A stretch of DNA of 64,000 bases from IMGVR_UViG_3300003877_000001:1-64000; one strand, 5' to 3'; counted from the stretch's first letter, positions 15,265-30,103 are shown. The notes: generated from the letters alone by a model not told the origin. Made by a program: numbers and translations.

Positions 15265-15909
15265 CTAAGGTTTTAACATTAAAACTACTAGGTATCTTTT
15301 TAATTCTTCGAAAAAAGGAAAAATTTTATATTGTTTTTGATAGATAGAACCATCTATATCGTGTTTTGTTGTAATACTTCTATCAATAAGAATAGATGTT
15401 AATTTATCTAGATTAAAATTAAAATATTCATACATTTTTAAATCAATACCAAATATATTATTATTATTATCTAATATGTAAATCATTTCATCCTTATATT
15501 GAAATGTATTAAATTTTTCATTAGGTAGTATATTTTTAAAATTTTCTAAATTAGATATTTTATCAAATATGGGATCAATATTTTTATATGTATATTTACC
15601 TCTAAAATAATAATACGGTGCATTTCTAACAAACATTTCTATTCCACCTACATGTTGTGCTTTATTTTCATTGAAAGAAAATTCCCAATATAATTGATTT
15701 GATTTGATTTCTTTATTTAGAATTGATATTTTATCATGGAAATCATTGAGTGTTACTTTAAACTGATTCCACCCTACAAACAATATTGGTATATCTGTTG
15801 GTATATTTAAATCATTACCACCATTTTTCATATCAATATAATTAATATAATCAACCTTAGTATGATTAACTAATTCATCTTCATATATAATATTACCTAT
15901 TTTGAACAT
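15265..15909 (-). CDS. Hypothetical protein
   Basis: 214-aa ORF, translationally coupled to the end of the glycan operon. Confidence 0.65.
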   Translation of the reverse strand: MFKIGNIIYEDELVNHTKVDYINYIDMKNGGNDLNIPTDIPILFVGWNQFKVTLNDFHDKISILNKEIKSNQLYWEFSFNENKAQHVGGIEMFVRNAPYYYFRGKYTYKNIDPIFDKISNLENFKNILPNEKFNTFQYKDEMIYILDNNNNIFGIDLKMYEYFNFNLDKLTSILIDRSITTKHDIDGSIYQKQYKIFPFFEELKRYLVVLMLKP

Positions 15910-16688
15910 TAAATTTTATCATTATCTACAACAACAACCCCCTTTTGTGTAACAACATATGATGCACATCTGTTTGCAAAATTAATTGCAGATGCAATAT
16001 CGTTATTTTCTAGATAATCCGCAACAAAACTAGCTAAAAATGTATCACCAGCTCCTGATAAATCTCGAACTTCTGATTTGTTTTTAATTGGGTGTATTAT
16101 AGTTGTTCCTAATGTCTTATCATAATGTTTAGCACCCTCTTTTCCTAGTGTTGTTATAAGATGATTTTTAAACCCATATAACTCATCTTCATTTTCCAAA
16201 TATTCTTTTTCATTAATTTTAATGAAATTAATATCATTTGCCCAACTACCTATTTTTTTCTTAGTATCTAGAAATGTTGGTATTTTATGTCCCTTACAAT
16301 ATGTAACTATTTTAAATATAATTTCTTCATCTAAAAACCCTTTATTATAGTCAGAGATAACAACACCATCCCAATGCGTTAGTTTTAATTTACCCCAAAA
16401 ACTTTTTAATGGTTTAACTTTATCTTCAGTATCTATACGTAAAAGCATTTGATTTGATACTTCATCAACATATCTTACTTTTGTAGGTTTATCTGAATCG
16501 TTTGTAATAATATCAACATGAACATTCAATGCTAATAAATTATTTAATACATTTTCAGCCATACCTACATTACTTTCCGTATTTGTTGGTTCAAATATTG
16601 GTACTGGTGCTTCAGGACTTATTCTATTACATTTTCCATATTGGAATACATCCAAACAACTATCTCCTATTACTAATACTTTTTTCAT
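15909..16688 (-). CDS. PfkB-family sugar kinase, heptose-7-phosphate kinase (RfaE/HldE domain I)-like
   Basis: VIGDSCLD, RISPEAPVP, SDYNKG, DLSGAGDTFLA. Confidence 0.85.
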   Translation of the reverse strand: MKKVLVIGDSCLDVFQYGKCNRISPEAPVPIFEPTNTESNVGMAENVLNNLLALNVHVDIITNDSDKPTKVRYVDEVSNQMLLRIDTEDKVKPLKSFWGKLKLTHWDGVVISDYNKGFLDEEIIFKIVTYCKGHKIPTFLDTKKKIGSWANDINFIKINEKEYLENEDELYGFKNHLITTLGKEGAKHYDKTLGTTIIHPIKNKSEVRDLSGAGDTFLASFVADYLENNDIASAINFANRCASYVVTQKGVVVVDNDKI

Positions 16689-17701
16689 AATTCTTTTAGT
16701 ATTTTTACTATCTTTTCTGAAGCATGTCCATCACCAAATGGTGATTCATATTTAATAATTGAATTGTTTATATATTTTTCAAATATATCTGGTAATTCTA
16801 ATGGTGATTTAACCATTCTTGTAGAATATCCTATTGCTTCGGGTCTTTCCGTTACTTTTCTGCAAGTTAAACAAATTTTATTTAAAAAGCTACATTCTTC
16901 TTGTATCCCACCTGAATCAGTTATAACTAATCTTGAATTTACTAAAACATCTAATAGTTCATCATGATCTAATGGTTCAATTATTTTAATGTTTGGTGCA
17001 TCAATGAATACTTTATTTATTTGAACTTTTGGGTTTGGATGCATTGGAAATATAAAATTAAGATAATTATGTTTTTTTGCTATTTCATTTATTAATAAAA
17101 ACCACTCTTTCATCCAATGATGATTTTCTCTTCTATGGAGTGTAATTAAAATATCGTTGCTACCTGTAAATGTTTTTAATTTTTCTTTCCAAGGTAATAG
17201 ATTATCTAATCCTGTATTTCCCACAACATATATATCACCTTCTGTTTTTTCTCTTTCTAAGTACGTTTTAGATAAATCTGTTGGACATAAATGTATATCA
17301 GCAATTGATGACACTATACGTCTATTTGTTTCTTCTGGATATGGGTTTTTCTTATCAAATGTTCTTAATCCAGCTTCAAGATGAATTACTTTTATTTGAT
17401 GATGAAATGCAGACAATGCAACGGCTAATACTGATGTCGTATCGCCTTGTACTAAAACATATTTTAATGTTGGTTCTAATCTAATTATAGATGTTAATTC
17501 ATTCATTATTGAACTAACTATTGAATCTAAACGATTTTCACCATCTTTAATTGATATTACATAATCTGATTTAAAATCAGCAATATTTAAATGTTGACCA
17601 GTAAATAGTATTTTATAATCAATATTATTTTTTATAAACTCTTTAATTAAAGGTTTAATTTTCAAATATTCTGGTCTTGTTCCAAATGTTAATAGTATCA
17701 T
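16685..17701 (-). CDS. wecB: UDP-N-acetylglucosamine 2-epimerase
   Basis: FGTRPEYLK, TGQH, VQGDT, HLEAGLRT, PYPEE, TLHRREN, TDSGGIQEE, PFGDG. Confidence 0.93.
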   Translation of the reverse strand: MILLTFGTRPEYLKIKPLIKEFIKNNIDYKILFTGQHLNIADFKSDYVISIKDGENRLDSIVSSIMNELTSIIRLEPTLKYVLVQGDTTSVLAVALSAFHHQIKVIHLEAGLRTFDKKNPYPEETNRRIVSSIADIHLCPTDLSKTYLEREKTEGDIYVVGNTGLDNLLPWKEKLKTFTGSNDILITLHRRENHHWMKEWFLLINEIAKKHNYLNFIFPMHPNPKVQINKVFIDAPNIKIIEPLDHDELLDVLVNSRLVITDSGGIQEECSFLNKICLTCRKVTERPEAIGYSTRMVKSPLELPDIFEKYINNSIIKYESPFGDGHASEKIVKILKEL

Positions 17702-18399
17702 AAGTTTTCAATTATTTTTTTTACATATTGAATATCATCATCATTTAATTGTTTATTGGTATATAATGATTTATACCATGTTTCCGTTATCATACCACCC
17801 CTTCTAAGTATATGCCCAAAATCTAAAACATGTTTTTTATCAGTACCTAATATGATAGCACCATCATTTTTTGCAACATCTCTTAATTCCCATTCCCAAG
17901 GAGAAATTCCTAATTCAAAATATTTCATAAAATATGATGTTCTCCATACACCATAATGTAACGATAATCTATATTCCCCATTATTAGGTAATTTAATAAA
18001 ATTATAATCATTCCCATTTTTATAAATATCATTACCATATACACTTGGTGCAGCAGATGTTAAACAGATTTTTACTACTTTGTCATCATTATCCATTAAT
18101 TTTTTAAATTCATTTATCATTTCAATATTTAATTCATCAACTGCAACAATATCATCATTACCATATATAAAATATTCATCTTTAAAATCTTTAAAAAAAT
18201 TATATATATCATTAGTGAAATTATCTGCACCATTATCATTACCCAAACAAAAAAACTTCCAATTACCCATATCAAATTCAGGTTTTTTATATCCTAAAAT
18301 AGTAATGTCTAAATTTGAACCGCCAAATTTATCCATTGTATATTTATTAGCTTCTAATATATTACGATATTTATCACATGTAGGTATTATTATTTTCAT
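17698..18399 (-). CDS. Putative glycosyltransferase (GT-A-like)
   Basis: IIIPTCDKY N-terminus, YGNDD, SPWEWE; glycan-cluster context. Confidence 0.55.
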   Translation of the reverse strand: MKIIIPTCDKYRNILEANKYTMDKFGGSNLDITILGYKKPEFDMGNWKFFCLGNDNGADNFTNDIYNFFKDFKDEYFIYGNDDIVAVDELNIEMINEFKKLMDNDDKVVKICLTSAAPSVYGNDIYKNGNDYNFIKLPNNGEYRLSLHYGVWRTSYFMKYFELGISPWEWELRDVAKNDGAIILGTDKKHVLDFGHILRRGGMITETWYKSLYTNKQLNDDDIQYVKKIIENL

Positions 18400-19391
18400 T
18401 ATCTATTCGATTTAATACCCTGTAATTCATCCATCCAATGATCAACCATTTCATGCATCATTATCTCAAATGAATATTCTGGTTTCCAACCTAAAACATT
18501 TCTTGCTTTTGTTGAATCACCCTTTAGATATGGTAACTCTTCTGGTCTAATAAATTTAGGGTTTTGTACTACATAATCTTTATAATTCATATCTAAATAA
18601 CTAAAAACAACATCACACATTTCACGAACTGAATGTGTTTCCATTGTTGATATAACAAAATCGTCTGCAATATCATGATTAATTACTTTATGCATTGCAC
18701 GAACATAATCTTTTGAATGCCCCCAATCTCTATAAGAATCAATATTCCCTAATTCTAGTTTATCTGCCTTTCCTAATTTAATCATACATGCAATTTTAAC
18801 TACTTTATTTGTAACAAAATTACTTCCTCTTCTTGGTGATTCATGATTAAATAATATTCCGTTGGTTGCGTGTAAATTATAAGCACGTCTATAATGACGA
18901 ACCATATTATATGAGAATACTTTAGCACAACCATAAGGAGATACTGGATTCATTAATGTAGTTTCTCTTTGAAACTTATCATTCTCAACAGTTAAACCAA
19001 ACATTTCAGATGAACTTGCTTGATAAAATTTAGCATCAGGGCAAAGTCTTTTATACGCTTCTAATATATTAACAACACCCAACGCATTTGTTTGTACTGT
19101 AAATTGTGGTATATCAAAACTAATTCTAACGTGTGACTGAGCACCTAAATTATATATTTCATCGGGCATTATTTCGGTTAATAGACGTTCTATTGATGTT
19201 TGATCTAATAAATCACCATAATGTACGTACATATTTTTATTACTTCTTAAACCTTCAATCCTATATTGTTGGTTTTCAGCAACAGAGTTTCTTCTAATCA
19301 TTCCATGTACTTCATATCCTAGTGATAATAAATATTCACTAAGATAACTACCATCTTGACCACTAATTCCTGTTATAAACGCTTTTTTCAT
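18399..19391 (-). CDS. gmd: GDP-mannose 4,6-dehydratase
   Basis: ITGISGQDGSYL, AQSHVRISF, YQASSSEMFG, SPYGCAK, GILFNHESPRRG, RDWG. Confidence 0.95.
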   Translation of the reverse strand: MKKAFITGISGQDGSYLSEYLLSLGYEVHGMIRRNSVAENQQYRIEGLRSNKNMYVHYGDLLDQTSIERLLTEIMPDEIYNLGAQSHVRISFDIPQFTVQTNALGVVNILEAYKRLCPDAKFYQASSSEMFGLTVENDKFQRETTLMNPVSPYGCAKVFSYNMVRHYRRAYNLHATNGILFNHESPRRGSNFVTNKVVKIACMIKLGKADKLELGNIDSYRDWGHSKDYVRAMHKVINHDIADDFVISTMETHSVREMCDVVFSYLDMNYKDYVVQNPKFIRPEELPYLKGDSTKARNVLGWKPEYSFEIMMHEMVDHWMDELQGIKSNR

Positions 19392-19408
19392 ATTTTATAT
19401 TTATTTTA

Positions 19409-20140
19409 CTATATTCTTATATTTTTTATCATTTCTTCAATATCTGGATACATCGTACTATTTCCACTATCTTCATTTTCTTCAGGTACACTATCCATTA
19501 ATATTATTCCTCTTGCTGCATCTTCAGGTGTCATATACATATGATATCCCTTTGTTTTTATATGATTACAATCATTATATGATACTGTCAGATCTCTACC
19601 ATCATAACTCATTAATTTTAACATCTTTGCTGCTTCCTTATCATCAGTTAAAATAATACCACCCTTACCAATTGGTATTCTTTTCTTTATTTGAAAAGAT
19701 ACAACCTGTAATGCATTATTTCCAACATACATGTCTTTAGTCCAACGTACTGCACCATCATATACTCTAGTAGGATTTAATCGATAAATTCCACTCCATT
19801 CATAATCTTTAAACTCATAATCTAATCCTACTTGATTAATTAACATAGGTAATGAAACATATGTTCTATTAGGTATGGTTATTTTAGGATGAATATTCCA
19901 TTCAACCATTATTTCACCAATATTCATTAGATATTTTAATGATAAAAACATACCATTTGTACAACAATCAGTTAAAATACCATATTTTGCACCTGCAAAT
20001 TCAGCAACTTTTTGTTCAAACATGTCAATCACTTCTCTTGGGTCGTTCCAATAATAACCCATTTCTTTTATTATGTCAAGTTCTGGACGTTGTAAATGTT
20101 TGGGTATTTGACCTAAAGGATAACTATCATATTTTTCCAT
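19409..20140 (-). CDS. DegT/DnrJ/EryC1/StrS-family aminotransferase (short)
   Basis: FEQKVAEFAGAKY, SFQIKK, GKGGIILTDD, MTPEDAARG. Confidence 0.8.
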   Translation of the reverse strand: MEKYDSYPLGQIPKHLQRPELDIIKEMGYYWNDPREVIDMFEQKVAEFAGAKYGILTDCCTNGMFLSLKYLMNIGEIMVEWNIHPKITIPNRTYVSLPMLINQVGLDYEFKDYEWSGIYRLNPTRVYDGAVRWTKDMYVGNNALQVVSFQIKKRIPIGKGGIILTDDKEAAKMLKLMSYDGRDLTVSYNDCNHIKTKGYHMYMTPEDAARGIILMDSVPEENEDSGNSTMYPDIEEMIKNIRI

Positions 20141-20990
20141 TCTTTATATTTTTTATTTCATTTTTTAATATCCAATCATTCATTTTAATATGTCTCATTT
20201 TAGGATAAACTACAATACCATTACATAATAGTGCAGATGCATAACTAAAAGAACTTATAGATAATACTAATAATTTAGCATTTATCATTCTAATAAACAT
20301 TTCATTTGAACTAATTTCATCATCATATATTATTTTATATTTATTATATGGTTTTGGATTAAAATTCAATCTTTGTGTGGTTATTATTATGTTTTCATTT
20401 CCATTTTTTGTTAATGTATCTAATATATTTAAATAATAATCATCGTTTAATATTCTATTTTGATATTTTACAATGTCTGATCTTCTAATATGTATGATTA
20501 TTTCGTTTGACATTTCATGTTTAAATTGAAATAATGAAAATATCTTACTTCTATATTTTTTCATTATTTCAATACTTAAATCTTTTCTATCTAAATGTTT
20601 ATGTAATGTTGATATTAAATATATTTTATTTTTATGTTCATTATTTTTTATTTCTCTAACTACTTGGGTCATATCACCTTTAACAATAGTAAAATCATTT
20701 AAAATTATATTATTAACATCAACACCCACATAATTTAATGTTTTATCCCATTCATTAGCACTCTTAATATACCCTTCTCTATTCCATGTACTATAATTTT
20801 TTGATCTTGTTTTTTCACCAGCAAGAAAATTAACACCAAACCCTTCATATGATAGTGGAACATTTAAGTATTCAATATCTTTAGAATATTCTTCATTTAA
20901 ATAATATGCAAACGCACAAACATTGAAAATTCTTTGAACTCTAGCACCCATTCCATCTTGTGCTATATTACATGCAATATATGTTTTCAT
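20127..20990 (-). CDS. GT11 (alpha-1,2-fucosyltransferase)-like glycosyltransferase
   Basis: IHIRRSD (cf. HVRRGD) and SISSFSYASA (cf. SNSTFSWWAA). Confidence 0.6.
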   Translation of the reverse strand: MKTYIACNIAQDGMGARVQRIFNVCAFAYYLNEEYSKDIEYLNVPLSYEGFGVNFLAGEKTRSKNYSTWNREGYIKSANEWDKTLNYVGVDVNNIILNDFTIVKGDMTQVVREIKNNEHKNKIYLISTLHKHLDRKDLSIEIMKKYRSKIFSLFQFKHEMSNEIIIHIRRSDIVKYQNRILNDDYYLNILDTLTKNGNENIIITTQRLNFNPKPYNKYKIIYDDEISSNEMFIRMINAKLLVLSISSFSYASALLCNGIVVYPKMRHIKMNDWILKNEIKNIKNGKI

Positions 20991-21691
20991 ATTAATATGT
21001 TTACATTTCTTTCTAAAGCAATTGTATTATACATTTGAATATCTTCTCTATACATATTCATTATTTTCATTTTAATATTAAAATTTGTTTTAATATAATT
21101 TGAAATTAATTTTTTCTTTTCCTCATTACCAACATTATCGTTTGGGAAATCTAAATCATTTTTAATCTTATATTTCTCTTTAAATTCTTTATATTCCCAT
21201 GATAAATTCTTCTCTAACATTATTTCGTCAATATCATTAATATTTAAACCTCTATCTTCTATAAATTTAATTTGTGGATATGTAACAGCATCATAATAAT
21301 TATTATCACTAATAGCATTCAAAAAATATTTAAAACTTTCAATAACATCATCTTGATTCTTATAAAAACAAGATTTTTTTGTTTCTTCTATTGGATGTTG
21401 ATTTGGATATCCATTATCTTCAAGTCTTAATAAATAAAGATACATTGAAATTACTCTATCAATTGGATTTCTTAATATACAAACAGTAACTAATCCTTTA
21501 TCTTTAACATCAATATATTTAAAATATCTACCACGCATATTTAATGCATTTCTAAATGAAATTGATGCGTTTTTATATATATGAATAAATGCAAACCTTT
21601 CTTCTGGGTCTACAAAACAACCATCAATTTTATAATTATATTTATTATATGGTTTATGTATACACATATCCCAATTTTTTCGCATTTTCAA
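20987..21691 (-). CDS. Sulfotransferase family 2 protein
   Basis: FIHIYKNASIS (5'-PSB) and ILRNPIDRVISMY (3'-PB) motifs. Confidence 0.8.
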   Translation of the reverse strand: MKMRKNWDMCIHKPYNKYNYKIDGCFVDPEERFAFIHIYKNASISFRNALNMRGRYFKYIDVKDKGLVTVCILRNPIDRVISMYLYLLRLEDNGYPNQHPIEETKKSCFYKNQDDVIESFKYFLNAISDNNYYDAVTYPQIKFIEDRGLNINDIDEIMLEKNLSWEYKEFKEKYKIKNDLDFPNDNVGNEEKKKLISNYIKTNFNIKMKIMNMYREDIQMYNTIALERNVNILI

Positions 21692-22202
21692 TTATTTTAT
21701 TACCATCAATCTTTTTTATCAACTTTGCAGGATTACCCTTATATATACCCCATTCTTCAGTATCACCATATATTAAACTTCCTGCTGTAACTAAAACACC
21801 TTTTCTTAGTATTGTACCCGGTAATATAATTGCATTTGAACCAACATTTGAAAATTCTTTCATTATGATTGGTTTTATTATTTGACTACCAACCAGTTCT
21901 TTAGGTATTAAAGCACCAAATAAACCAGAATCATCAAACCTATCTGAACCACATACAATTCTAGCACCAGCCATAATATTATTAAATCCTTTTAATGTTA
22001 ACATTCCATCAATACCGCCAATAGATGTCACATGTGGTGCAATATGGATATAATCACCTGTTTTCATTCCAGTTGTACAATAAAAACCATAATCAATTGC
22101 AATATGATTACCCAGTTCAATTAATTCTGGTCTTTTAAATTCAACATTTGAATGTATAAATATATCTTTACCTTGTTTAATTTTCATATTTGTTACATTC
22201 AA
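21654..22202 (-). CDS. Hexapeptide-repeat O/N-acyltransferase
   Basis: Left-handed beta-helix repeats, VGSNAIILPG, IYKGNPAKLIK; real start may be the second Met (22187). Confidence 0.85.
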   Translation of the reverse strand: MNVTNMKIKQGKDIFIHSNVEFKRPELIELGNHIAIDYGFYCTTGMKTGDYIHIAPHVTSIGGIDGMLTLKGFNNIMAGARIVCGSDRFDDSGLFGALIPKELVGSQIIKPIIMKEFSNVGSNAIILPGTILRKGVLVTAGSLIYGDTEEWGIYKGNPAKLIKKIDGNKIIENAKKLGYVYT

Positions 22203-23153: not shown

Positions 23154-23791
23154 TATATTTTTTTATTTTTAAATGTCATTTCTTTATGCATTGTTATACC
23201 ATCATTTAAATCGATTAATACATCAAAATATTTTTTTAAATAATCAATTAATTTTGATAATTTTTCTTTTAATTGAATATGAATTTCTACTGATATATAT
23301 TTAATTTTAGATAAATCCTTATTCATTAATAGATTATATTCACTCCCCTCACAATCAACCTTCAAGTAATCAATTTCTTTAGTTCCAATTATTTCATAAA
23401 TATCTTCAATAGTAATTGTTTCAACCATTTCATAGTTATTATCATCCCATCTATCATCATCATATGTAGATGCATTTCCTGAATAATTAGATGCTTTATA
23501 TGCTTTTAATTTAATTTTATCACCAGATTTATTTGAAACAGCATATTTATAAAGTTTAACATTATCAAACATTTCAATATTTTTTAAGCATTCATTATAT
23601 GTATATTCTGCTGGTTCAAAACAATATATTTTTTCAAATTTATTATGATTAACAATTGGAAACCCACCAACATTTGCACCAACATCTACTGCAACACCAA
23701 AACCATTAAATTCATCAGGCACATAATATGCCTTTTTTACACCATTTATTCTTGTTGTTAACCAATTTGTAGGGTCGTTAAATTCTATCAT
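23153..23791 (-). CDS. FkbM-family methyltransferase
   Basis: VDVGANVG, FEP, LKVDCEGSEY. Confidence 0.88.
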   Translation of the reverse strand: MIEFNDPTNWLTTRINGVKKAYYVPDEFNGFGVAVDVGANVGGFPIVNHNKFEKIYCFEPAEYTYNECLKNIEMFDNVKLYKYAVSNKSGDKIKLKAYKASNYSGNASTYDDDRWDDNNYEMVETITIEDIYEIIGTKEIDYLKVDCEGSEYNLLMNKDLSKIKYISVEIHIQLKEKLSKLIDYLKKYFDVLIDLNDGITMHKEMTFKNKKI

Positions 23792-24840
23792 ATTTGTTTA
23801 AATTTATTAAATACATCATTAGTTTTTAAATCTTTATATCCACCGTTTTCACCTAAATCAGCAACATTTTGTGGATAATTTTGCATTAATGCAAGACCAT
23901 GTGCTGCTTCTTGTGGTGTCATATACATATTCCAACCAAGTGTTTTTATATTATCATCTTTATAACCAATTGCTGATCTTCCTTCATATCTTGCTTTCTT
24001 AAACCATTCAACAGCTTCAGGGTTGTCGGTTAATATCATACCACCCTTACCCATTGGTAGTGTTTTTTTTATATGAAATGACAAACATATAAATTTACCT
24101 TTCATATACATATTAGATGTAAATCTTTTAGCAGCATCAATTACAGGTAAAGGTTCTAATGAATACATACCAGACCATTCATAATTTCTAAATTTTACAT
24201 CATAACCAGCATGAATTGCAGACATTGGTACTGATAAATATGTTTTATTTGGAATAATAACATATTCATTATCATAATCTTCTAGTTCTTTCATATACAT
24301 TAAAGAAAGAAATATTGCATTAGTACAACTATCAATAGCTACCGCATAAGGTGCACCAGTATATTTAGCAACTTCTTCTTCAAACATTTCAACAATTTTA
24401 AATGGATTATGTAAATTTGTTTTATATTCTACAAATTCTTTTTTATAATATTTGAATTTTGAATCTTCCATTACAAACTTAAACCCACATGAAATAAAAA
24501 GTTTATTACTAGACTCATTATCATGTTTAACTTTAGCAAAAGATGTTGGGGCTAATCTCATTAGTTCGTTAATCATTAATTTACCATATCCTTTCTTTTG
24601 GTGATCAGGATGTGTACAAACCCTAATATCATTATCAACAGAACCAACAAAACCTACTGGAATATCATTAACCAAACAAATCCAATATTCGTCATTATGC
24701 TTTTCCATATACTTTTCCTGTTGTTTTGATGTAATTTGAACATTTTCAATAAACCCATCTTGAACTTGATCATTAGATCTTAGTTTTCTAATAAATTCCC
24801 AATACCTTTTCTCGTTCTTTACTAACTTTACCATATACAA
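23788..24840 (-). CDS. GNAT acetyltransferase fused to a DegT-family aminotransferase
   Basis: N-terminal THPDHQKKGYGK GNAT motif; C-terminal FEEEVAKYTGAPYAVAIDSCT, LSFHIKK, GKGGMILTD. Confidence 0.8.
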   Translation of the reverse strand: MYMVKLVKNEKRYWEFIRKLRSNDQVQDGFIENVQITSKQQEKYMEKHNDEYWICLVNDIPVGFVGSVDNDIRVCTHPDHQKKGYGKLMINELMRLAPTSFAKVKHDNESSNKLFISCGFKFVMEDSKFKYYKKEFVEYKTNLHNPFKIVEMFEEEVAKYTGAPYAVAIDSCTNAIFLSLMYMKELEDYDNEYVIIPNKTYLSVPMSAIHAGYDVKFRNYEWSGMYSLEPLPVIDAAKRFTSNMYMKGKFICLSFHIKKTLPMGKGGMILTDNPEAVEWFKKARYEGRSAIGYKDDNIKTLGWNMYMTPQEAAHGLALMQNYPQNVADLGENGGYKDLKTNDVFNKFKQI

Positions 24841-25589
24841 ATTTTTCTATTTCCTCCTTTTAAATACCCCCTTATACCTTTCATACCTAAATAATCATTC
24901 ATTGTAGTACCAACATCTATATATGTATTATTTGGGTATTTCTTATATAAATGATGTATTAAAAAATTACTTAGTGATGATGCCGAAAATAAAAATACAT
25001 GATTTTCAATTAAATTTTCACTAATCCAATTGTCCATATGTTCAATTAATTCATAATCATTAATAATACAATTTTTACCAACTCTAAAATCTTTTTCAAC
25101 CTTAAATGGTAGTCCATCAATATGTCCAATTTCATTTAGAACGTAAACAATTTTCTTATTTGAAAATTCTGGAATCATATATTCTTTAAATAATGGGAAA
25201 TTACCATTAACCCATAAATTAGACCATGTTAATAAATCACTATTTGGATTACCATCATACCAATCAACCATTTCATCAAAATCTGCTTGACCAACACAAC
25301 AACGACAAGATAATCCCACATAATAGTTATTTTGAAGATGTTGATAAGCATCCATTAATTCTTGTCTATAAAATTGGTGTTTATTTGGATCAAAATGTTT
25401 ATAATCCTCTGGATGATAAAATCCTGCTGTTTTTTTATTACCTATTTTAAAATAATCATTAGCAAGAATAAGTTCTTTATTTTGCATTATACGTAATTCA
25501 CCATCTGAAAATCTACTAAAGGCAAAATTTTCACCCCTTTTAAATTTATCAAATAACATAAAAAAATGTTCTTTAAATATTTTACTCAT
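24828..25589 (-). CDS. GT-D fold (DUF1792-like) glycosyltransferase
   Basis: FAFSRFSDGE motif and C-terminal IDVGT. Confidence 0.65.
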   Translation of the reverse strand: MSKIFKEHFFMLFDKFKRGENFAFSRFSDGELRIMQNKELILANDYFKIGNKKTAGFYHPEDYKHFDPNKHQFYRQELMDAYQHLQNNYYVGLSCRCCVGQADFDEMVDWYDGNPNSDLLTWSNLWVNGNFPLFKEYMIPEFSNKKIVYVLNEIGHIDGLPFKVEKDFRVGKNCIINDYELIEHMDNWISENLIENHVFLFSASSLSNFLIHHLYKKYPNNTYIDVGTTMNDYLGMKGIRGYLKGGNRKICIW

Positions 25590-26323
25590 TTTATTTTATG
25601 TACAGTATTCCAACCTTTATCAATACATTTAGAACAAACCAAATCTCTTAATCCATAATGATCTGCATTTATCTTAAATGATGCAACATTATCATTTCCT
25701 AACCCACCATCTCTTTCTGGGAGATTACCCCACATTTCTCTATCACTTTCAGGATGTGGTGGTACAAATGTATTTATTCCACCATATTTTTGTGCTAAAT
25801 ATGAAAACATAATATCTTCACCATTATCCCATGATACTGGTTTTTCATACCACATATATTTTGCCCATTCTTGTTTAAAAAACCACCCATGACCAACTAA
25901 ATCAACTCTCATTGTCCCATCACTATGTGTTCCTGTCCACCCAGCCTTAGAGTGTGGTCTATACGCTTTACTATTAATTATAACACCACTAGACCCTAAT
26001 ATACCATTATGTTTTTTCATCGTAGTTAAACAATTTTCAAACCATTTATTACCCGGAATAGTATCATCATCAAACATTGCAATATAGGGTGTTCTTATTA
26101 ATAATGGAATTGTAAATCTTCCATGGAATTTACTATTCCAATTAGTCACATATGTTTTTACGTTTTTATTTATTGGTAAATTTTGTCGAATATCTGATTT
26201 ATTAAACCAAACATGAATATTTTCTGGTTTAATTTTAACTGTTTGATTTAAAACAGCCTCAATTTGTTTATCTAAACTATGTGGTCTTTTATATACGTTT
26301 AATATAACTGATATTTCTTCCAT
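25586..26323 (-). CDS. GT2-like glycosyltransferase
   Basis: VILNVYKRP, AMFDDDTIPG, GEDIMFS. Confidence 0.75.
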   Translation of the reverse strand: MEEISVILNVYKRPHSLDKQIEAVLNQTVKIKPENIHVWFNKSDIRQNLPINKNVKTYVTNWNSKFHGRFTIPLLIRTPYIAMFDDDTIPGNKWFENCLTTMKKHNGILGSSGVIINSKAYRPHSKAGWTGTHSDGTMRVDLVGHGWFFKQEWAKYMWYEKPVSWDNGEDIMFSYLAQKYGGINTFVPPHPESDREMWGNLPERDGGLGNDNVASFKINADHYGLRDLVCSKCIDKGWNTVHKIK

Positions 26324-26325
26324 AT

Positions 26326-27312
26326 TTATTTGTTTTTATCATCAATAAATCTCCATGTATGTATTGGTTGTTTATCTCTTTGTAATTTATTCATTTTAGA
26401 ATCTTCATTTCCATTATGTTTAACTAATGAGAATTCGGTTTTATGTACTAATAATTTCATTTGATGAATTTTTTGACTTACTTGTCTCCAAACACCTGAA
26501 CTTAATTCTTTATCATTTTTCCATCTACTTTCTGATATTTCATCAATATTAAATTTTATTTTTTCTATAAATTTATAATCAAAAAGAGTTCCACCATCAA
26601 CCCAATGTTTAAAACCCCATGCTAATTGATTTGAATTATGTGTAATATGATATGAAATTCCAACATATCTATTATTTATTTCTTTCAATTCAAAAAATTT
26701 ATCTAGTAAAATATCTAAATAATTTTCACATAAAATATAATCATCATCAATTTGTAATATTGCATGGGATTTATTTTCTGAACTAACTTTAAATAATTCA
26801 TTAATTGTTTTCCAATATCTATATTTCCCACCATTTTTAACATTTTCAATATATTCTAATTTAGGAAAATAATCTTTTATTGTTTTATATTTATAATACG
26901 TTGAACCGTCATTCAATAATACTATTTTAAATTTATATTTACTGTCTTGTGTATATAATTGACTAATTAATCTTTTAACTTTGGCATATCTATTAAATGA
27001 TGATATTAAAATTACAACATCATATTTTATATTTAATTCTTTTAAATAATCAACATCAAAAATATCATCATAAACACCTCTTCTAATAAGCCCTCTTTGC
27101 TCATGTTTAGTTAATCCTTTTTTTATTTCTATTCTTTCTTTTCCTTTTGTTTGAGAAGCATCAATTTTTATATAACTCTGTTTTGGTTTTGGTGTACTAA
27201 TTAATTTTGGTTGTTTTTTTGATATTAATTTATTATTAATACGACTTTCTCTATTATTATTAATAACAATCCTTTTTTTTATAATATTTTTTATTGTTCT
27301 ATTTTTAGCCAT
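26326..27312 (-). CDS. GT2-like glycosyltransferase with a basic N-terminal extension
   Basis: ISSFNR, LNDGS, QIDDD; first ~80 aa K/R/I-rich. Confidence 0.75.
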   Translation of the reverse strand: MAKNRTIKNIIKKRIVINNNRESRINNKLISKKQPKLISTPKPKQSYIKIDASQTKGKERIEIKKGLTKHEQRGLIRRGVYDDIFDVDYLKELNIKYDVVILISSFNRYAKVKRLISQLYTQDSKYKFKIVLLNDGSTYYKYKTIKDYFPKLEYIENVKNGGKYRYWKTINELFKVSSENKSHAILQIDDDYILCENYLDILLDKFFELKEINNRYVGISYHITHNSNQLAWGFKHWVDGGTLFDYKFIEKIKFNIDEISESRWKNDKELSSGVWRQVSQKIHQMKLLVHKTEFSLVKHNGNEDSKMNKLQRDKQPIHTWRFIDDKNK

Positions 27313-27337
27313 TTCTTTTATATTTTTTTTATAAATA

Positions 27338-27997
27338 CTACCATGACCCTAATTTATGTTTATTAATTATTTTTAGTAAATTTTCTCTTTCATTATTAGT
27401 GTTTGATGTTATTCCTTCATCTAGATAATATGCAAAGAATTCAATATCTTGTACTGCAATACCCTCTATTCCTTGTTTCAATAATGTCAACCAAATATCC
27501 CAATCTTGTAATCTTTTTAATGATTCATCAAACATAGGAAAAATATCACTTCTTATTAATGACATTGTTGATATATAATTTTCTCTTTTTAATACTCTAC
27601 CATCAAATGGTCTTGTTGATATTCTAAAATTCGTTTTTATTGGGTGATTAATTTTATCTTGTACTATACCAAAATATCCTCCATATGCATATCCTTTATC
27701 TGGATTTTTTTCTAAAACATCAATTGCTTTTTCTAAAAAACTAGATGGAAATATAATATCATTATCACTAAATAAAACATATTTTTGTGTAGATTTTTTA
27801 AATCCGTCATTACGTTTTTTAGGTGCACCACCATCATCAGTATTTATAATAATTTCATTTGGTAGCATTCCTTCTATTGATGGGTAACAAAAATCTTTAA
27901 AGAATTTGTCTCTTATTGGTGTTACTTTATGTGGTATTATTACTGATACTGGATATCCATCATCATATTTTTCTATGTTTATCATATATGTGTCCAA
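27338..27997 (-). CDS. GT2 glycosyltransferase
   Basis: PVSVIIP, GAPKKRNDG, FSDND, FDESLKRLQDWDIW. Confidence 0.85.
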   Translation of the reverse strand: MDTYMINIEKYDDGYPVSVIIPHKVTPIRDKFFKDFCYPSIEGMLPNEIIINTDDGGAPKKRNDGFKKSTQKYVLFSDNDIIFPSSFLEKAIDVLEKNPDKGYAYGGYFGIVQDKINHPIKTNFRISTRPFDGRVLKRENYISTMSLIRSDIFPMFDESLKRLQDWDIWLTLLKQGIEGIAVQDIEFFAYYLDEGITSNTNNERENLLKIINKHKLGSW

Positions 27998-28144: not shown

Positions 28145-29215
28145 TTATCGGTAATTCCGATTTATATTTTTAAATTCATTGTACCATTTATTTTTTGTTA
28201 TTGCATCATGTGCACCAAGTTGATTTTTTTTAAAATCATTATATGATTTATATTTTTTTACTTCAATTAAACAATTCTCCAATGTCCAATAATTATTTGG
28301 TTTTTTTAAAAGAATCATATGTTTGGTAATATCAATATACCAATTATTTCTATGTGCTGCTTGATAGGCATTAGAACTATTTTTTTTAAATTCACTTTTT
28401 GTTTTATATTTTTTTGCCTCAATTAAACATTTTTCTTTTGTCCATTTTATTTTTTGTTTTTTCATATGTTTACAACATTCTTTTAACCACCCATTATTTA
28501 ATGTACTATTATATGCTGTTCTATTATTTTTTATAAATTCAGTTTTTGTTTTATATTTTTTTGCCTCAATTAAACATTTTTCTTTTGTCCATTTTAAATG
28601 ACTATTTTTTGGCATATGATTATAACATTCTTTTAACCATCCATTTCTTTTTGCGGAATTATATGCACCACCAAATTTTATTTTAAATTCTGATTTTGTA
28701 TTACATAATAATCCAGCTTCAACACATTTTTTTTTCGTCCAAAAGATAATACCACAACCCAAAGCACCACATTTATTTTTATTTAAAATATTCCAACCTT
28801 TCTTATTATAGTGTTCTAGAATATCACCCACAACAATTGAAGCAAGTTTTTTATCTAATAATTTAGTTTTTTGAATAAAAATTGGTACTAATTCAGTTTT
28901 TTTTATATATTTATATACAGTACTTTTTTTAGATGTTAAATGTTCATTTTTCCTTCTACTAAGATCATATGTTAAACCAACATATATTGATTTATCTAAA
29001 AATTCAAATACATAAATAAATCTTTTAAACCTAGAACCTAAAATCTCCATATGTTTAATAGAGTCTTCAAAACAATTTAATTTTTTAGATGCTTTATATG
29101 AACTATTCGATTTTATTGCCCATTCGGTCTTCGAATTAAATTTTAATGCTTCTATTTTAATATTCTCAATATTCCATTTTTTATTTTTTCTTTTAAATTT
29201 CCCTTGGTAATTCAT
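28145..29215 (-). CDS. GIY-YIG-type homing endonuclease with tandem repeats of about 44 aa
   Basis: FIYVFEF..KSIYVGLT...RRKNEH; several KWTxExCxxEAKKY...AY....NGW repeats; start revised to MNYQG (29215). Confidence 0.75.
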   Translation of the reverse strand: MNYQGKFKRKNKKWNIENIKIEALKFNSKTEWAIKSNSSYKASKKLNCFEDSIKHMEILGSRFKRFIYVFEFLDKSIYVGLTYDLSRRKNEHLTSKKSTVYKYIKKTELVPIFIQKTKLLDKKLASIVVGDILEHYNKKGWNILNKNKCGALGCGIIFWTKKKCVEAGLLCNTKSEFKIKFGGAYNSAKRNGWLKECYNHMPKNSHLKWTKEKCLIEAKKYKTKTEFIKNNRTAYNSTLNNGWLKECCKHMKKQKIKWTKEKCLIEAKKYKTKSEFKKNSSNAYQAAHRNNWYIDITKHMILLKKPNNYWTLENCLIEVKKYKSYNDFKKNQLGAHDAITKNKWYNEFKNINRNYR

Positions 29216-29900
29216 CTTTATATAATTCACTAAAGATTTTTTTATTATTATCCCATTCAATGTTTGTTTGACCAATAGAATTATGAATTATTGAGATTTT
29301 ATCTATAACACCAATATTACATCCATCTAAATAGTTTGGAAATATCATTCCTAGATCGTAATAGTGAAACCCTTTAAATCTTTCATCAAATCTATTTATA
29401 ATAGTTTCACCATTAACACAAATAAAAACACCATCAACAACAACAACTTCTTTAATATTTTTTATTTCTCTACTATAAATACTCTCAAAAATTCTAATTC
29501 CATTATTATGATAAACTCTACCATACATTTTTTTTCTGTTCATTTCTTTACCGTCTTCGGTTAACCACCAACATCCATGTTTAGGCAATTCCGTACTACC
29601 TGCCAAACCAATAATATCATAATCATTTTTATTAAATATATTTACTATTTTTTTGCTCCAATCTTTTGTTCTAATTAATATATCATTATGTAGAAATACA
29701 ATTATATCCTTACCAAGACCTAATTTATCTAAAGTTTTCCATCCCATATTATATGCTTCAGATAGTGAAAATTCATTCATATTTACAATACATTCTACAT
29801 GAATAGGTATACCAGCAGTATTTTTTAAATGAGATATAAATTTATTATTATCTTCTTCAGAATAATGACTACTAAAAATTACTGATAAATTTTTTTTCAT
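29193..29900 (-). CDS. Glycosyltransferase-like protein (GT-A)
   Basis: SLSEAYN, VFLHNDI, IIGLAG, VDGVFI, FHYYD. Confidence 0.8.
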   Translation of the reverse strand: MKKNLSVIFSSHYSEEDNNKFISHLKNTAGIPIHVECIVNMNEFSLSEAYNMGWKTLDKLGLGKDIIVFLHNDILIRTKDWSKKIVNIFNKNDYDIIGLAGSTELPKHGCWWLTEDGKEMNRKKMYGRVYHNNGIRIFESIYSREIKNIKEVVVVDGVFICVNGETIINRFDERFKGFHYYDLGMIFPNYLDGCNIGVIDKISIIHNSIGQTNIEWDNNKKIFSELYKDELPREI

Positions 29901-30103
29901 AAAATATAATTAGTTATCGCATCTTCACTAGAAGATAGAGAAATGGTTTTATTATAAATATCATGAAGCAAATACTGATTATGATTAACAAAAGCATGTA
30001 CGATATGAGGTATTTCACATGTATCATTAATATATTGTATAAACATATCGTTTTCATATGTAGTTAGATGTGAACTAAAGACTACTATTATCCTTTTTTT
30101 CAT
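29897..30103 (-). pseudogene. Truncated paralogue of the N-terminus of 29193..29900
   Basis: MKKRIIVVFSSH...YN aligns with MKKNLSVIFSSH...AYN and stops after 68 aa. Confidence 0.6.

What the first reader, a model, noticed from the sequence alone, without database searches (positions are those of the whole stretch)
15909..30103. 14-kb phage glycan-synthesis island with no export machinery: candidate virion glycosylation system
Seen: Gmd, WecB, an HldE-type kinase, two DegT aminotransferases, GNAT and hexapeptide acyltransferases, two methyltransferases, a sulfotransferase, a cupin and about seven glycosyltransferases (GT2, GT11-like, GT-D-like), all on one strand between head-type and baseplate genes. 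No flippase, Wzy, ABC exporter or undecaprenyl-priming transferase is recognisable. The recurrent late-type motif AGTATTTAT (27331-27339) heads the main run. Inference: late cytoplasmic synthesis of a sulfated, methylated and acylated amino-deoxy glycan attached to virion proteins (as a shield or to mimic the host surface) rather than a host O-antigen.
Basis: partly seen in the sequence, partly recalled or inferred. Interest (0 to 1): 0.78.

Follow-up and report, generated by a model that had tools for sequence, protein, structure and literature searches.

The report
Jumbo-phage late-operon glycan synthesis island
A 326-kb T4-like phage from a hydrothermal-vent metagenome carries, directly behind its baseplate genes, a 14-kb block of soluble sugar-building enzymes with no export machinery; the block's core is conserved across the phage lineage, and it most likely decorates the phage's own particle proteins, although this is not proven.

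Summary
Window 15909-30103 is one co-directional, tightly packed run of 20 minus-strand ORFs. It encodes Gmd, non-hydrolysing WecB, an HldA/HldE-type kinase, two C-terminally short DegT-like PLP enzymes (one fused to a GNAT), a hexapeptide acyltransferase, a WbuC cupin, two methyltransferases, a PAPS-type carbohydrate sulfotransferase and seven glycosyltransferases (GTs). Four GTs are called by Pfam and three by Atlas leads.

The 326-kb genome has no protein with six or more hydrophobic segments. It also has no Bac_transf, Wzy_C, ABC ATPase, integrase, ThyA-type hydroxymethylase or sugar nucleotidyltransferase.

GTATTTAT is the most enriched upstream 8-mer in the genome. It heads the portal, TerL, sheath, tail-fibre and baseplate genes, so "late-type" is reasonable.

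New here: related uncultured jumbo-phage contigs carry the island at the same site, after a ~1000-aa baseplate protein and a 103-aa protein. They share a lineage-specific GT core and differ in the sugar-nucleotide genes. One subgroup has only a single two-domain GT.

Virion-protein glycosylation is the best reading (about 0.45). Remodelling of the host envelope through host carriers remains a real rival. The "head-type" left flank is not supported.

The parts
29897..30103 (-). 68-aa ORF. It is a duplicated N-terminal fragment (residues 1-67) of the adjacent Glyco_tranf_2_5 GT and is probably a relic.
   Evidence: blastp against relatives' full-length GTs gives 30-38% identity over residues 1-67.
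29193..29900 (-). Core GT 1 (Glyco_tranf_2_5, GT-A fold). It is the only GT present in every relative and is a candidate initiating transferase.
   Evidence: PF13712 at 87 bits. About 34 homologue clusters, all metagenomic, many on jumbo contigs. Model pLDDT 95.5. Best PDB match is the UDP-binding majastridin 2qgi at TM 0.68, followed by generic GT-A hits including ppGalNAc-Ts.
28145..29275 (-). GIY-YIG homing endonuclease inserted inside the island. The likely ATG is at 29215.
   Evidence: PF01541. A GIY-YIG gene sits at the same place in relative L046.
27338..27997 (-). Core GT 2 (GT2). The likely ATG is at 27985.
   Evidence: PF00535 at 35 bits. 51-63% identical in L011-L014 and L020.
27331..27339 (-). 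Late-type promoter-like motif AGTATTTAT, starting 27 nt upstream of the ATG at 27312.
   Evidence: The same motif heads the portal, TerL, sheath, tail-fibre, 1025-aa and 835-aa genes.
26326..27312 (-). GT2 of 328 aa, semi-core (present in L012, L013 and L020).
   Evidence: PF00535 at 33 bits.
25586..26323 (-). Core GT 3 (GT2).
   Evidence: PF00535 at 24.6 bits. 53-62% identical in six relatives.
24828..25589 (-). Core GT 4, GT-D-like (a lead only).
   Evidence: No Pfam hit on the protein itself. Atlas feature and structure neighbours carry PF08759 or PF22882. Faint GT-D hits on homologues in L046 and L047. A profile search found no PDB match.
23788..24840 (-). Fusion of a GNAT acetyltransferase with a short DegT-like PLP enzyme. 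The two are separate genes in relative L011.
23153..23791 (-). FkbM-family methyltransferase.
   Evidence: PF05050 at 57 bits and TIGR01444 at 82 bits.
22734..23153 (-). WbuC-family cupin.
   Evidence: TIGR04366 at 39.6 bits, just under its cut-off of 42. 58% identical to the cupin next to Gmd on a Prolixibacteraceae MAG contig.
22177..22734 (-). Class I SAM methyltransferase.
   Evidence: PF08241 at 35 bits.
21654..22202 (-). Left-handed beta-helix (hexapeptide) sugar acyltransferase.
   Evidence: NeuD/PglB/VioB, WbbJ and WcaF family hits at about 1e-8 to 1e-9.
20987..21691 (-). PAPS-type carbohydrate sulfotransferase. The gene as called elsewhere is 226 aa.
20127..20990 (-). GT11-like (fucosyltransferase-like) GT (a lead only).
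   Evidence: Atlas score 0.97 to a cluster carrying PF01531; structural TM 0.63-0.81. No Pfam hit.
19409..20140 (-). Short DegT-like PLP enzyme (243 aa), a paralogue of the domain in 23788-24840.
18399..19391 (-). GDP-mannose 4,6-dehydratase.
   Evidence: PF16363 at 378 bits and TIGR01472 at 380 bits. 72% identical to a Bacteroidota MAG homologue and 46-47% to cyanophage Gmd.
17698..18399 (-). GT-A-fold GT (a lead only), linked to Gmd in relative L014.
   Evidence: Atlas structural TM 0.62-0.66 to GT2 clusters. The nearest clusters are viral.
16685..17701 (-). Non-hydrolysing UDP-GlcNAc 2-epimerase (WecB). It is semi-core, sitting at the distal end of the island in L015, L020, L046 and L047.
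15909..16688 (-). HldA/HldE-type (heptose-7-phosphate kinase-like) PfkB kinase, short at 259 aa.
15265..15909 (-). Conserved 214-aa protein of unknown function. It marks the distal border of the island in all relatives.
30157..33545 (-). Upstream baseplate genes (1025 aa and 103 aa), with the late-type motif at 33564-33572. The island follows them with no terminator-like site on the gene strand.
   Evidence: PHROG 7145, baseplate wedge, for the 103-aa protein. Motif. No minus-strand terminator-like site. Synteny in all relatives.

Best explanation
The island is a phage-lineage-specific, cytoplasmic glycan-assembly module that is transcribed with the late baseplate genes.

Inferred mechanism:
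- Host GDP-mannose and UDP-GlcNAc are converted by the phage's Gmd, DegT-like/GNAT/hexapeptide enzymes and WecB into 6-deoxy-amino-(N-acyl) sugars and UDP-ManNAc.
- A conserved set of four or five soluble GTs (GT2_5, two or three GT2, one GT-D-like) builds a core oligosaccharide directly on phage-encoded acceptor proteins before or during assembly.
- Variable, horizontally acquired genes (further GTs, two methyltransferases, a sulfotransferase, the Gmd branch) decorate the core.
- Candidate acceptors are the mucin-like poly-Thr linkers of two late tail or baseplate-region proteins elsewhere in the genome (G000:271173-275594, 1473 aa; G000:267711-268763, 350 aa), and possibly capsid proteins.

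Shown: enzyme identities, solubility, lack of any export or priming gene, synteny and the core-plus-variable architecture, and the association of the motif with structural genes.

Inferred: late timing, the sugar structures, the acceptor, and any shielding role.
For: 1. None of the 20 island products has a hydrophobic segment at the 1.6 threshold; one has a single weak segment at 1.4. No ORF in the 326-kb genome has six or more. No Bac_transf, Wzy_C or ABC ATPase is present. No ORF with a hydrophobic segment occurs in seven related islands, and no exporter family is listed in two more.
2. The location is fixed, directly after the ~1000-aa and 103-aa baseplate genes, in L011-L020, L046 and L047. 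The shared core is GT2_5, GT2, GT2 and GT-D-like. Island length varies from 1.5 kb (a single GT2_5+GT2 fusion in the L016 group) through 6, 8 and at least 10 kb to 14 kb.
3. The core GTs are phage-specific. GT2_5 occurs only in about 34 metagenomic clusters. The nearest Atlas clusters are 79-100% viral. tblastn finds nothing in 50,697 GenBank phage records.
4. The motif GTATTTAT is 10.8-fold enriched upstream of genes, mostly 20-30 nt before the ATG. It heads the portal, TerL, sheath, tail-fibre, tape-measure-like and 1025-aa genes. It is conserved before the same genes in relatives. The island has one internal copy, no gene-strand terminator-like site, and overlapping or abutting ORFs.
5. No integrase and no ThyA-type hydroxymethylase are present, which weakens the seroconversion and DNA-sugar readings.
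6. Poly-Thr tracts with mixed synonymous codons occur in late proteins of G000. They also occur next to or in the orthologue in G001, G003 and G005.
7. Precedents exist. GT-D (DUF1792) elongates O-glycans on a Ser-rich adhesin in the cytoplasm (PMC5063993, PMC5207161). Chloroviruses and Megavirinae use virus-encoded sugar-nucleotide enzymes and GTs, with a conserved core and clade-specific clusters, to glycosylate capsid or fibrils (PMC7826918, PMC10117803, PMC9614988). Mycobacteriophage capsid and tail-tube glycans are cited in PMC12619734.
Against: - There is no direct evidence that any virion protein is glycosylated.
- No RNA data exist, so "late" rests on a motif that also precedes some homing-endonuclease genes and genes of unknown function.
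- The sugar-nucleotide genes are typical O-antigen or capsule genes. Gmd and the cupin are 72% and 58% identical to a Bacteroidota-type cluster.
- An HldE-type kinase points to heptose, a sugar best known from the LPS core.
- A conserved first GT could equally act on a universal lipid-linked primer such as Und-PP-GlcNAc made by the host.
- The co-fold of GT2_5 with a poly-Thr segment gave no answer.
- The GT-D, GT11 and one of the GT-A assignments are Atlas leads only.
Confidence: 0.45

Rival explanations
1. Host-envelope remodelling. The soluble phage enzymes build a glycan on a host lipid carrier. The host's WecA-type priming enzyme makes the primer, and the host's flippase or ABC transporter and ligase export it. 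The result changes LPS, capsule or another surface polymer of the infected cell, for example to block superinfection or to stop progeny adsorbing to debris. This is the usual reading of LPS or cell-wall gene islands in large T4-like cyanophages.
For: The sugar-nucleotide set (Gmd, WbuC cupin, hexapeptide acyltransferase, DegT, WecB, FkbM, HldE-type kinase) is the standard content of bacterial surface-polysaccharide loci. Gmd and the cupin are closest to a Bacteroidota MAG cluster. Large cyanomyoviruses carry comparable GT and epimerase sets that are read as cell-surface modification (PMC12801897). Gmd occurs in many cyanophages. Lack of phage exporters does not exclude use of host ones.
Against: No priming transferase, flippase, polymerase, ligase or ABC component occurs in any of about ten islands or in the complete genome. 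The core GTs are lineage-specific, syntenic with baseplate genes and conserved at 34-40% structural-protein divergence, which is unexpected if the acceptor were a host-specific intermediate. The only promoter-like signals are of the late type, leaving little time for surface remodelling. No integrase is present.
Confidence: 0.28
2. DNA hypermodification. The GTs attach sugars to modified bases of phage DNA to evade restriction, as in T4 hmC glucosylation and the multi-sugar DNA glycans reported for other viruses.
For: The backbone is T4-like (gp23-type MCP). Virus GTs that build diverse glycans on DNA are reported (Pyle et al. 2024, as cited in PMC12619734).
Against: No ThyA-family dCMP/dUMP hydroxymethylase is present in a genome rated 100% complete. 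Seven GTs plus aminotransferases, acyl-, methyl- and sulfotransferases far exceed known DNA-sugar systems. The island is placed with the late baseplate genes, not with nucleotide-metabolism or replication genes.
Confidence: 0.05
3. Another cytoplasmic acceptor or product: glycosylation of host proteins, a lipid or small molecule, or synthesis of a soluble or stored oligosaccharide. A variant is a sink that diverts host nucleotide sugars away from envelope synthesis.
For: All enzymes are soluble and no acceptor is identified. The best structural match of the core GT, majastridin, itself has no acceptor named in its PDB entry titles.
Against: A multi-step decorated glycan (amino, acyl, methyl, sulfate) with lineage-wide conservation in a structural operon is hard to explain as a sink or as a host-protein effector. 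There is no precedent in phages.
Confidence: 0.1

Closest known systems
LPS / cell-wall synthesis and modification gene islands of large T4-like cyanophages (P-SSM2, S-SCSM1, S-SCSM2R; PMC12801897)
   Same: The backbone is a T4-like myovirus of more than 200 kb. Both have clusters of many small GTs (GT2, GT11 and others) plus nucleotide-sugar dehydratases and epimerases including Gmd (46-47% identical). Neither has dedicated exporters, and the function is unresolved in both.
   Different: The core GTs here have no tblastn match in any GenBank phage. The island is anchored at one site behind the baseplate genes across a whole lineage, with a conserved GT core, instead of being a free hypervariable island. 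It adds a sulfotransferase, short DegT-like enzymes and an HldE-type kinase.
Autonomous virion glycosylation of giant viruses (chlorovirus PBCV-1 capsid glycans; Megavirinae fibril glycans; PMC7826918, PMC10117803, PMC9614988, PMC4691112)
   Same: Both use virus-encoded Gmd or 4,6-dehydratase, DegT-type aminotransferase, N-acetyltransferase, methyltransferase domains and cytoplasmic GT-A-type GTs. Both show a conserved glycan core with clade-specific variable gene clusters. Several nearest structural clusters of the island GTs are from Nucleocytoviricota.
   Different: The host here is a bacterium and the virion is tailed. No sequence-level orthology was shown. Attachment of the glycan to virion proteins is demonstrated there and only inferred here.
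Mycobacteriophage virion glycosylation (Freeman et al. 2023, as summarised in PMC12619734)
   Same: Phage-encoded GTs modify structural proteins (capsid and tail tube) in the cytoplasm without export machinery.
   Different: Those systems have one or two GTs and no sugar-nucleotide pathway. They belong to unrelated siphoviruses of high-GC hosts. The present island has seven GTs and about eleven tailoring or precursor enzymes.
Cytoplasmic O-glycosylation of serine-rich repeat adhesins (Fap1; GT-D/DUF1792 plus GT-A enzymes; PMC5063993, PMC5207161)
   Same: A series of soluble GTs, including a GT-D-fold enzyme, acts sequentially on Ser/Thr-rich low-complexity tracts in the cytoplasm. The phage has a GT-D-like core GT and poly-Thr tracts in late proteins.
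   Different: No GtfA/GtfB-type initiating pair and no accessory Sec system were seen in the island annotation. GT-D membership here is only a structural and feature lead.
Bacterial O-antigen / capsule loci (for example the cupin-Gmd-acetyltransferase-DegT cluster on a Prolixibacteraceae MAG contig, L054)
   Same: The precursor genes are the same. Gmd is 72% and the cupin 58% identical.
   Different: The phage island lacks a priming transferase, Wzx, Wzy or Wzm/Wzt. It lies in a phage late operon. Its DegT-like enzymes are truncated paralogues only 22% identical to the bacterial DegT.
Moraphage core glycosyltransferase orthogroups (PMC12619734)
   Same: This is another uncultured aquatic jumbo-phage lineage in which four GT orthogroups belong to the core genome, with the function left open between DNA, host and virion.
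   Different: Moraphages are reported as distinct from the T4 group and reach at most 307 kb. The present genome has a gp23-type MCP. Relatedness of the GTs was not tested.

Membership tests
Bacterial Wzx/Wzy- or ABC-dependent surface polysaccharide locus | Clustered nucleotide-sugar synthesis genes and glycosyltransferases | tested here: met
Bacterial Wzx/Wzy- or ABC-dependent surface polysaccharide locus | Initiating phosphoglycosyl transferase (Bac_transf, or a polytopic WecA/MraY-type enzyme) | tested here: not met
   PF02397 has no match in the genome, while the control rings in 10 of 14 genomes. No ORF has six or more hydrophobic segments.
Bacterial Wzx/Wzy- or ABC-dependent surface polysaccharide locus | Flippase, polymerase or ligase, or a Wzm/Wzt ABC exporter | tested here: not met
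   PF04932 and PF00005 have no match. The hydrophobicity scan gives a maximum of five segments, in a Gly/Ala-rich tape-measure-like protein. None occurs in related islands.
Temperate-phage seroconversion modules (GtrABC / O-acetyltransferase type) | Membrane proteins GtrA, GtrB and GtrC or Oac, and a temperate lifestyle | tested here: not met
   No polytopic membrane protein. No tyrosine integrase.
Phage DNA sugar hypermodification (hmC/hmU-based) | ThyA-family pyrimidine hydroxymethylase supplying the acceptor base | tested here: not met
   PF00303 has no match in a record rated 100% complete.
Phage DNA sugar hypermodification (hmC/hmU-based) | Glycosylated bases in virion DNA | not testable with these tools
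   This needs nucleoside LC-MS or native-read analysis.
Virus-encoded autonomous virion glycosylation (giant-virus / mycobacteriophage type) | Virus-encoded soluble GTs and nucleotide-sugar tailoring enzymes, independent of membrane machinery | tested here: met
Virus-encoded autonomous virion glycosylation (giant-virus / mycobacteriophage type) | Clade-conserved core with clade-specific variable genes | tested here: met
Virus-encoded autonomous virion glycosylation (giant-virus / mycobacteriophage type) | Expression together with structural (late) genes | tested here: inconclusive
   There is motif and operon evidence only. No RNA run holds the sequence.
Virus-encoded autonomous virion glycosylation (giant-virus / mycobacteriophage type) | Glycan covalently attached to virion proteins | not testable with these tools
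   The co-fold of GT2_5 with a poly-Thr segment gave no answer. Glycoproteomics is needed.
T4-like cyanophage LPS/CWSM islands | T4-like myovirus backbone with a GT and sugar-nucleotide gene cluster including Gmd | tested here: met
   gp23 MCP at 209 bits. Sheath and baseplate. Gmd shared with cyanophages.
T4-like cyanophage LPS/CWSM islands | Homology of the GTs to those of cultured cyanophages | tested here: not met
   tblastn of the GT2 (245 aa) and the GT-D-like (253 aa) proteins against 50,697 phage records gave no match.
GT-D (DUF1792) glycosyltransferases (for 24828-25589) | Match to PF08759 or PF22882, or to a solved GT-D structure | tested here: inconclusive
   No Pfam hit on the protein. 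Faint hits on two homologues. Atlas structural TM 0.65-0.85 to clusters carrying these families. The profile search found no PDB sequence.
PAPS-dependent carbohydrate sulfotransferases (Sulfotransfer_2) (for 20987-21691) | Family match, sulfotransferase fold and conserved PAPS-binding stretches | tested here: met
   PF03567 at 24.5 bits, cut-off 22, and present on most of 43 homologues. Z 10.9 and 9.9 to heparan sulfate 6-O- and 2-O-sulfotransferases, with all 50 listed entries being sulfotransferases. Invariant IHIYKNASIS, and invariant P68 and R71 with nearly invariant S74; reading these as the 5'-PSB and 3'-PB motifs rests on my own knowledge.
DegT/DnrJ/EryC1 sugar aminotransferases (for 19409-20140 and the C-terminal part of 23788-24840) | Full-length fold-type I domain of about 360 aa with the PLP-binding lysine | tested here: inconclusive
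   The lysine-containing SF-x-x-x-K stretch aligns. Only profile positions ~24-260 are covered, and the proteins end about 100 residues early. The same short form occurs in relatives.

The most novel reading that the evidence does not exclude
A lineage of T4-like jumbo phages carries, as part of its baseplate late operon, a self-contained cytoplasmic O-glycosylation system. Phage-specific GTs lay down a conserved core glycan on poly-Thr (mucin-like) linkers of tail or baseplate receptor-binding proteins. Horizontally captured sugar-nucleotide, methyl-, acyl- and sulfotransferase genes diversify it from phage to phage. This would be a bacterial-virus counterpart of giant-virus glycosylation and would include the first sulfated phage glycan.
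Probability: 0.2. Interest if true: 0.8.

Novelty: new variant of a known kind. Interest (0 to 1): 0.55.

Why it matters
Glycan-gene islands in large phages are widespread, but their target is unknown. The usual assumption, host-surface remodelling, has little evidence behind it.

This lineage gives a cleaner test case:
- The core GTs are phage-specific.
- They sit at a fixed site in a structural operon.
- In one subgroup they are reduced to a single two-domain enzyme, which is an easy construct to test.
- Candidate acceptors can be named.

If virion proteins are the target, complex and even sulfated glycans on tailed-phage particles would matter in several ways. They could affect adsorption, protease and defence resistance, particle stickiness in the environment and antigenicity. 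The finding would also extend "autonomous viral glycosylation" from giant eukaryotic viruses and mycobacteriophages to T4-like jumbo phages.

Tried and rejected
- DNA (megablast) and tblastn searches of GenBank phages with the island, the 1025-aa protein, a core GT2 and the GT-D-like protein found nothing. There is no cultured relative.
- A co-fold of GT2_5 with the poly-Thr segment of the 350-aa protein gave "no answer". It is not used as evidence.
- A profile of the GT-D-like family against PDB sequences gave no match.
- phmmer of the sulfotransferase against PDB gave no match. The assignment had to come from the fold.
- The sigma-70 promoter scan found fewer sites than in shuffled sequence, and no gene-strand terminators, so no separate early promoter is indicated.
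- The search for RNA runs found only DNA runs of a hydrothermal-vent metagenome.
- The neighbourhood of the second GT (G000:283122-284498) turned out to be mixed (HNH endonuclease, tRNA nucleotidyltransferase, DNA polymerase). It adds nothing to the argument.
- I asked whether poly-Thr tracts are unusual. They are common, so I make no statistical claim.
- A chimera with a bacterial locus is rejected. GC is even at 0.23-0.28 across the island against 0.275 for the genome. The same layout occurs in independent contigs. An identical 139-kb contig exists.
- Membership of the moraphages was considered and left open. They are described as outside the T4 group, whereas this genome has a gp23-type MCP.

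Full report
**Context.** The window is the first 64 kb of a 325,854-bp IMG/VR virus record that CheckV rates 100% complete. Its GC content is 27.5%. The only sequencing runs holding the sequence are DNA runs of a hydrothermal-vent metagenome. The phage is a T4-like myovirus: it has a gp23-type major capsid protein (209 bits), a tail sheath, baseplate hub and wedge proteins, and a portal and large terminase. No record in a 50,697-record GenBank phage collection matches the island DNA or three of its flanking or core proteins. The lineage is therefore uncultured.

**Observation.** Window 15909-30103 holds 20 consecutive minus-strand ORFs. Of the 21 gene junctions between 30468 and 15265, 17 overlap or are separated by no more than 2 nt. 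Pfam and NCBIfam support:
- Gmd;
- non-hydrolysing WecB, above its curated cut-off;
- a PfkB kinase whose best family and best solved relative are heptose-7-phosphate kinases;
- an FkbM and a class I methyltransferase;
- a hexapeptide acyltransferase;
- a WbuC cupin, just under its cut-off;
- a GNAT;
- four GT-A glycosyltransferases.

Three further ORFs without Pfam hits have Atlas neighbours of GT-D, GT11 and GT-A type. These three are leads, not family memberships.

The two "DegT aminotransferases" are real but unusual. Both are ~220-aa domains covering only the first two-thirds of the family. Both keep the lysine-containing SF-x-x-x-K stretch. They are paralogous, and the same short form occurs in relatives. 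In relative L011 the GNAT and the short DegT are separate genes.

The sulfotransferase call started weak, at 24.5 bits. I tested it further:
- Most of its 43 homologue clusters carry PF03567.
- An alignment-based model (pLDDT 91) aligns to heparan sulfate 6-O- and 2-O-sulfotransferases at Z 10.9 and 9.9.
- All 50 listed entries are PAPS-dependent sulfotransferases.

One is a GIY-YIG homing endonuclease at 28145-29275; a GIY-YIG gene sits at the same place in relative L046. The other is that the 68-aa ORF at the island's upstream end is a duplicated N-terminal fragment of the adjacent GT.

**Flanks.** The upstream (right) flank is baseplate-type. It holds a 103-aa PHROG baseplate-wedge protein, a 1025-aa protein, and an 835-aa protein whose five Gly/Ala-rich hydrophobic segments look like a tape measure. 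A PF12322 / PHROG baseplate-hub protein follows. The downstream (left) flank holds acidic proteins of unknown function, then UvsX, an exonuclease and DnaB. "Head-type" is not supported.

**No export machinery.** A Kyte-Doolittle scan of 472 ORFs found none with six or more hydrophobic segments, and none in any island product at the standard threshold. Searches of the whole genome, each with positive controls, found no:
- Bac_transf;
- Wzy_C;
- ABC ATPase;
- sugar nucleotidyltransferase;
- APS kinase;
- tyrosine integrase;
- ThyA-family enzyme.

The phage therefore depends on host GDP-mannose, UDP-GlcNAc and PAPS. It encodes no way to prime or export a lipid-linked glycan.

**The motif.** AGTATTTAT at 27331-27339 lies on the gene strand, and its first base is 27 nt before the ATG at 27312. 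The full 9-mer occurs 67 times on both strands together against about 27 expected. Its core GTATTTAT is the most enriched 8-mer in upstream regions: 60 genes against 5.6 expected. It usually lies 20-30 nt before the start codon. It precedes the portal, the large terminase, the sheath, a tail-fibre protein, the tape-measure-like protein, the 1025-aa baseplate protein and the gene ahead of the capsid gene.

A second motif, GTAACCTT, heads mostly small genes. In relatives, GTATTTAT lies roughly 20-60 nt before the homologues of the 1025-aa and tape-measure-like genes, while their islands mostly lack an internal copy. No terminator-like site lies on the gene strand between 33545 and 15265, and sigma-70-like sites are fewer than in shuffled sequence. 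The simplest reading is late transcription starting at 33564 and again at 27331. This is an inference from sequence; there are no transcript data.

**Comparative anatomy (new).** Relatives were found through the 1025-aa protein (34-39% identity) and through the first GT. All have the same order: baseplate hub, tape-measure-like protein, ~1000-aa protein, 103-aa protein, then a Glyco_tranf_2_5 GT.
- In six contigs (L011-L015, L020) and two further ones (L046, L047), a shared core follows: GT2, sometimes a second GT2, another GT2, and the GT-D-like protein. After the core comes a variable set of methyltransferases, short DegT with or without GNAT, WecB, Gmd and others.
- The island ends at the homologue of the 214-aa protein (15265-15909) where the flank reaches that far.
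- Island length is 1.5, about 6, about 8, at least 10 and 14 kb.
- In the L016-L019 group, the whole island is one 498-aa protein with Glyco_tranf_2_5 and GT2 domains.
- No ORF with a hydrophobic segment occurs in any of these islands.

The first GT occurs only in about 34 metagenomic protein clusters, several on contigs of 290-370 kb. The nearest Atlas clusters of the unnamed GTs are 79-100% viral. By contrast, Gmd and the cupin are 72% and 58% identical to a cupin-Gmd-acetyltransferase-DegT cluster on a contig binned to a Prolixibacteraceae MAG. The architecture is thus a phage-specific GT core plus captured bacterial precursor genes. This also rules out a chimeric assembly.

**Acceptor.** This cannot be settled by computation. 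Three lines of evidence bear on it.

1. The first GT folds confidently (pLDDT 95.5). It is closest to the UDP-binding protein majastridin (TM 0.68), followed by many GT-A enzymes including polypeptide GalNAc-transferases. I treat this as generic GT-A similarity.
2. The only biochemically studied role of the GT-D fold that I found in the literature is cytoplasmic elongation of O-glycans on a Ser-rich adhesin (PMC5063993, PMC5207161).
3. A scan of all ORFs for Ser/Thr-rich windows picked out two late-region proteins outside the window.
   - One is a 1473-aa protein headed by the late motif, in a module that includes a baseplate wedge subunit. It carries the tract TTTTTTTTTAPTTTTIAPTTTTTTTTTAAPTTT between a large N-terminal part and a C-terminal BNR-like domain (weak Pfam hits).
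   - The other is a nearby 350-aa protein with a run of more than 25 Thr.
   - The tracts use interleaved ACA, ACT, ACC and ACG codons, with the rare ACC and ACG over-represented. This argues for selection on the residue and against codon slippage.
   - Thr tracts occur in or next to the orthologue in G003, G001 and G005; G005 belongs to the single-GT group.

Poly-Thr tracts are common in viral contigs generally, so this is a lead and not a test. A co-fold of the GT with one tract gave no answer.

**Explanation and rivals.** I rate virion-protein glycosylation at about 0.45. It best fits five things together:
- soluble enzymes only;
- no priming or export function anywhere;
- a lineage-conserved, phage-specific GT core anchored in a late baseplate operon;
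- variable captured decoration genes;
- the precedents in chloroviruses, Megavirinae and mycobacteriophages (PMC7826918, PMC10117803, PMC9614988; Freeman et al. as cited in PMC12619734).

Host-envelope remodelling through host carriers is rated 0.28. It is the conventional reading for similar cyanophage islands (PMC12801897), and the O-antigen-like precursor genes and the heptose-type kinase favour it. A universal primer such as Und-PP-GlcNAc would also allow a conserved first GT. Against it are the late-type signals, the absence of any membrane component in about ten islands, and the lack of lysogeny genes.

DNA glycosylation is rated 0.05. It is disfavoured by the absence of a hydroxymethylase and by the sheer complexity of the enzyme set. 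Another cytoplasmic acceptor or product is rated 0.10.

**Novelty and score.** Glycan-gene islands in large T4-like phages, and virus-encoded virion glycosylation, are both known kinds. This one is a new variant. It has an uncultured-lineage-specific GT core fixed behind the baseplate genes and a minimal two-domain form in one subgroup. It also has a well-supported carbohydrate sulfotransferase, truncated DegT-like enzymes, and nameable candidate acceptors. Interest is moderate (0.55).

Noticed in passing
window 38275-40116 (+): The PhoH gene is 613 aa, against about 260 aa in relatives. It carries LAGLIDADG, Hom_end and Intein_splicing hits between its N- and C-terminal PhoH parts, so it is an intein-containing PhoH.
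   Followed up: partly
window 28145-29275 (-); L046:11143-11685: A GIY-YIG homing endonuclease sits between the first and second core GTs. A GIY-YIG gene occupies the same intergenic position in a 321-kb relative. Next to it, the 68-aa ORF 29897-30103 is a duplicated N-terminal GT fragment, possibly a scar of homing.
   Followed up: partly
window 11342-12520 and 12524-13984 (-): Two adjacent, very acidic paralogues share the N-terminus MR(V/I)HKKIGTKE(K/R)LFEMFENVNK. One carries DUF5661, and that short domain recurs in unrelated viral contigs. Their function is unknown.
   Followed up: no
upstream of window 33950-34417 (+), 56790-57269 (-) and 57422-57835 (-), and 18 further genes genome-wide: A second promoter-like motif, GTAACCTT(TA), lies 35-59 nt before mostly small genes and is 10-fold enriched. 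It is likely a different temporal class from GTATTTAT.
   Followed up: partly
G000:271173-275594 (-) and G000:267711-268763 (-), outside the window (loci L028, L082): These late-region proteins carry mucin-like poly-Thr linkers written in mixed synonymous codons. The 1473-aa protein ends in a BNR/Asp-box-like domain. Similar tracts occur in relatives G001, G003 and G005.
   Followed up: partly
window 42784-43596 (+); G000:283122-284498 (-): There are two further GT-like genes outside the island. One is a weak GT2 (20.5 bits) conserved in all relatives beside the baseplate block. The other is a 458-aa protein (PHROG 7162 glycosyltransferase, weak Glyco_trans_1_4) headed by the late motif.
   Followed up: partly
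window 49570-51291 (+); G000:75826-77463 (-); G000:285908-286852 (-): The genome holds several large HNH-type homing endonuclease genes. Two of them are preceded by the late-type motif, and one lies directly beside the capsid gene.
   Followed up: no
L054 (Prolixibacteraceae MAG contig JAQIBQ010000435.1): A short 9.4-kb contig (the fetched locus has 36% GC) carries an epimerase-cupin-Gmd-hexapeptide-DegT cluster that is the closest cellular relative of the phage Gmd and cupin. It is a hint of a Bacteroidota donor or host, although the contig could be misbinned.
   Followed up: partly
L002 / L010 (IMGVR_UViG_3300003876_000001, 138,979 bp): A second IMG/VR record is 100% identical over the two queried proteins. 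It is probably a shorter assembly of the same phage, so it is not independent support.
   Followed up: no
L047:10001-10693: In one 75-kb relative, the first GT (Glyco_tranf_2_5) is inverted relative to the rest of the island and to the baseplate genes.
   Followed up: no
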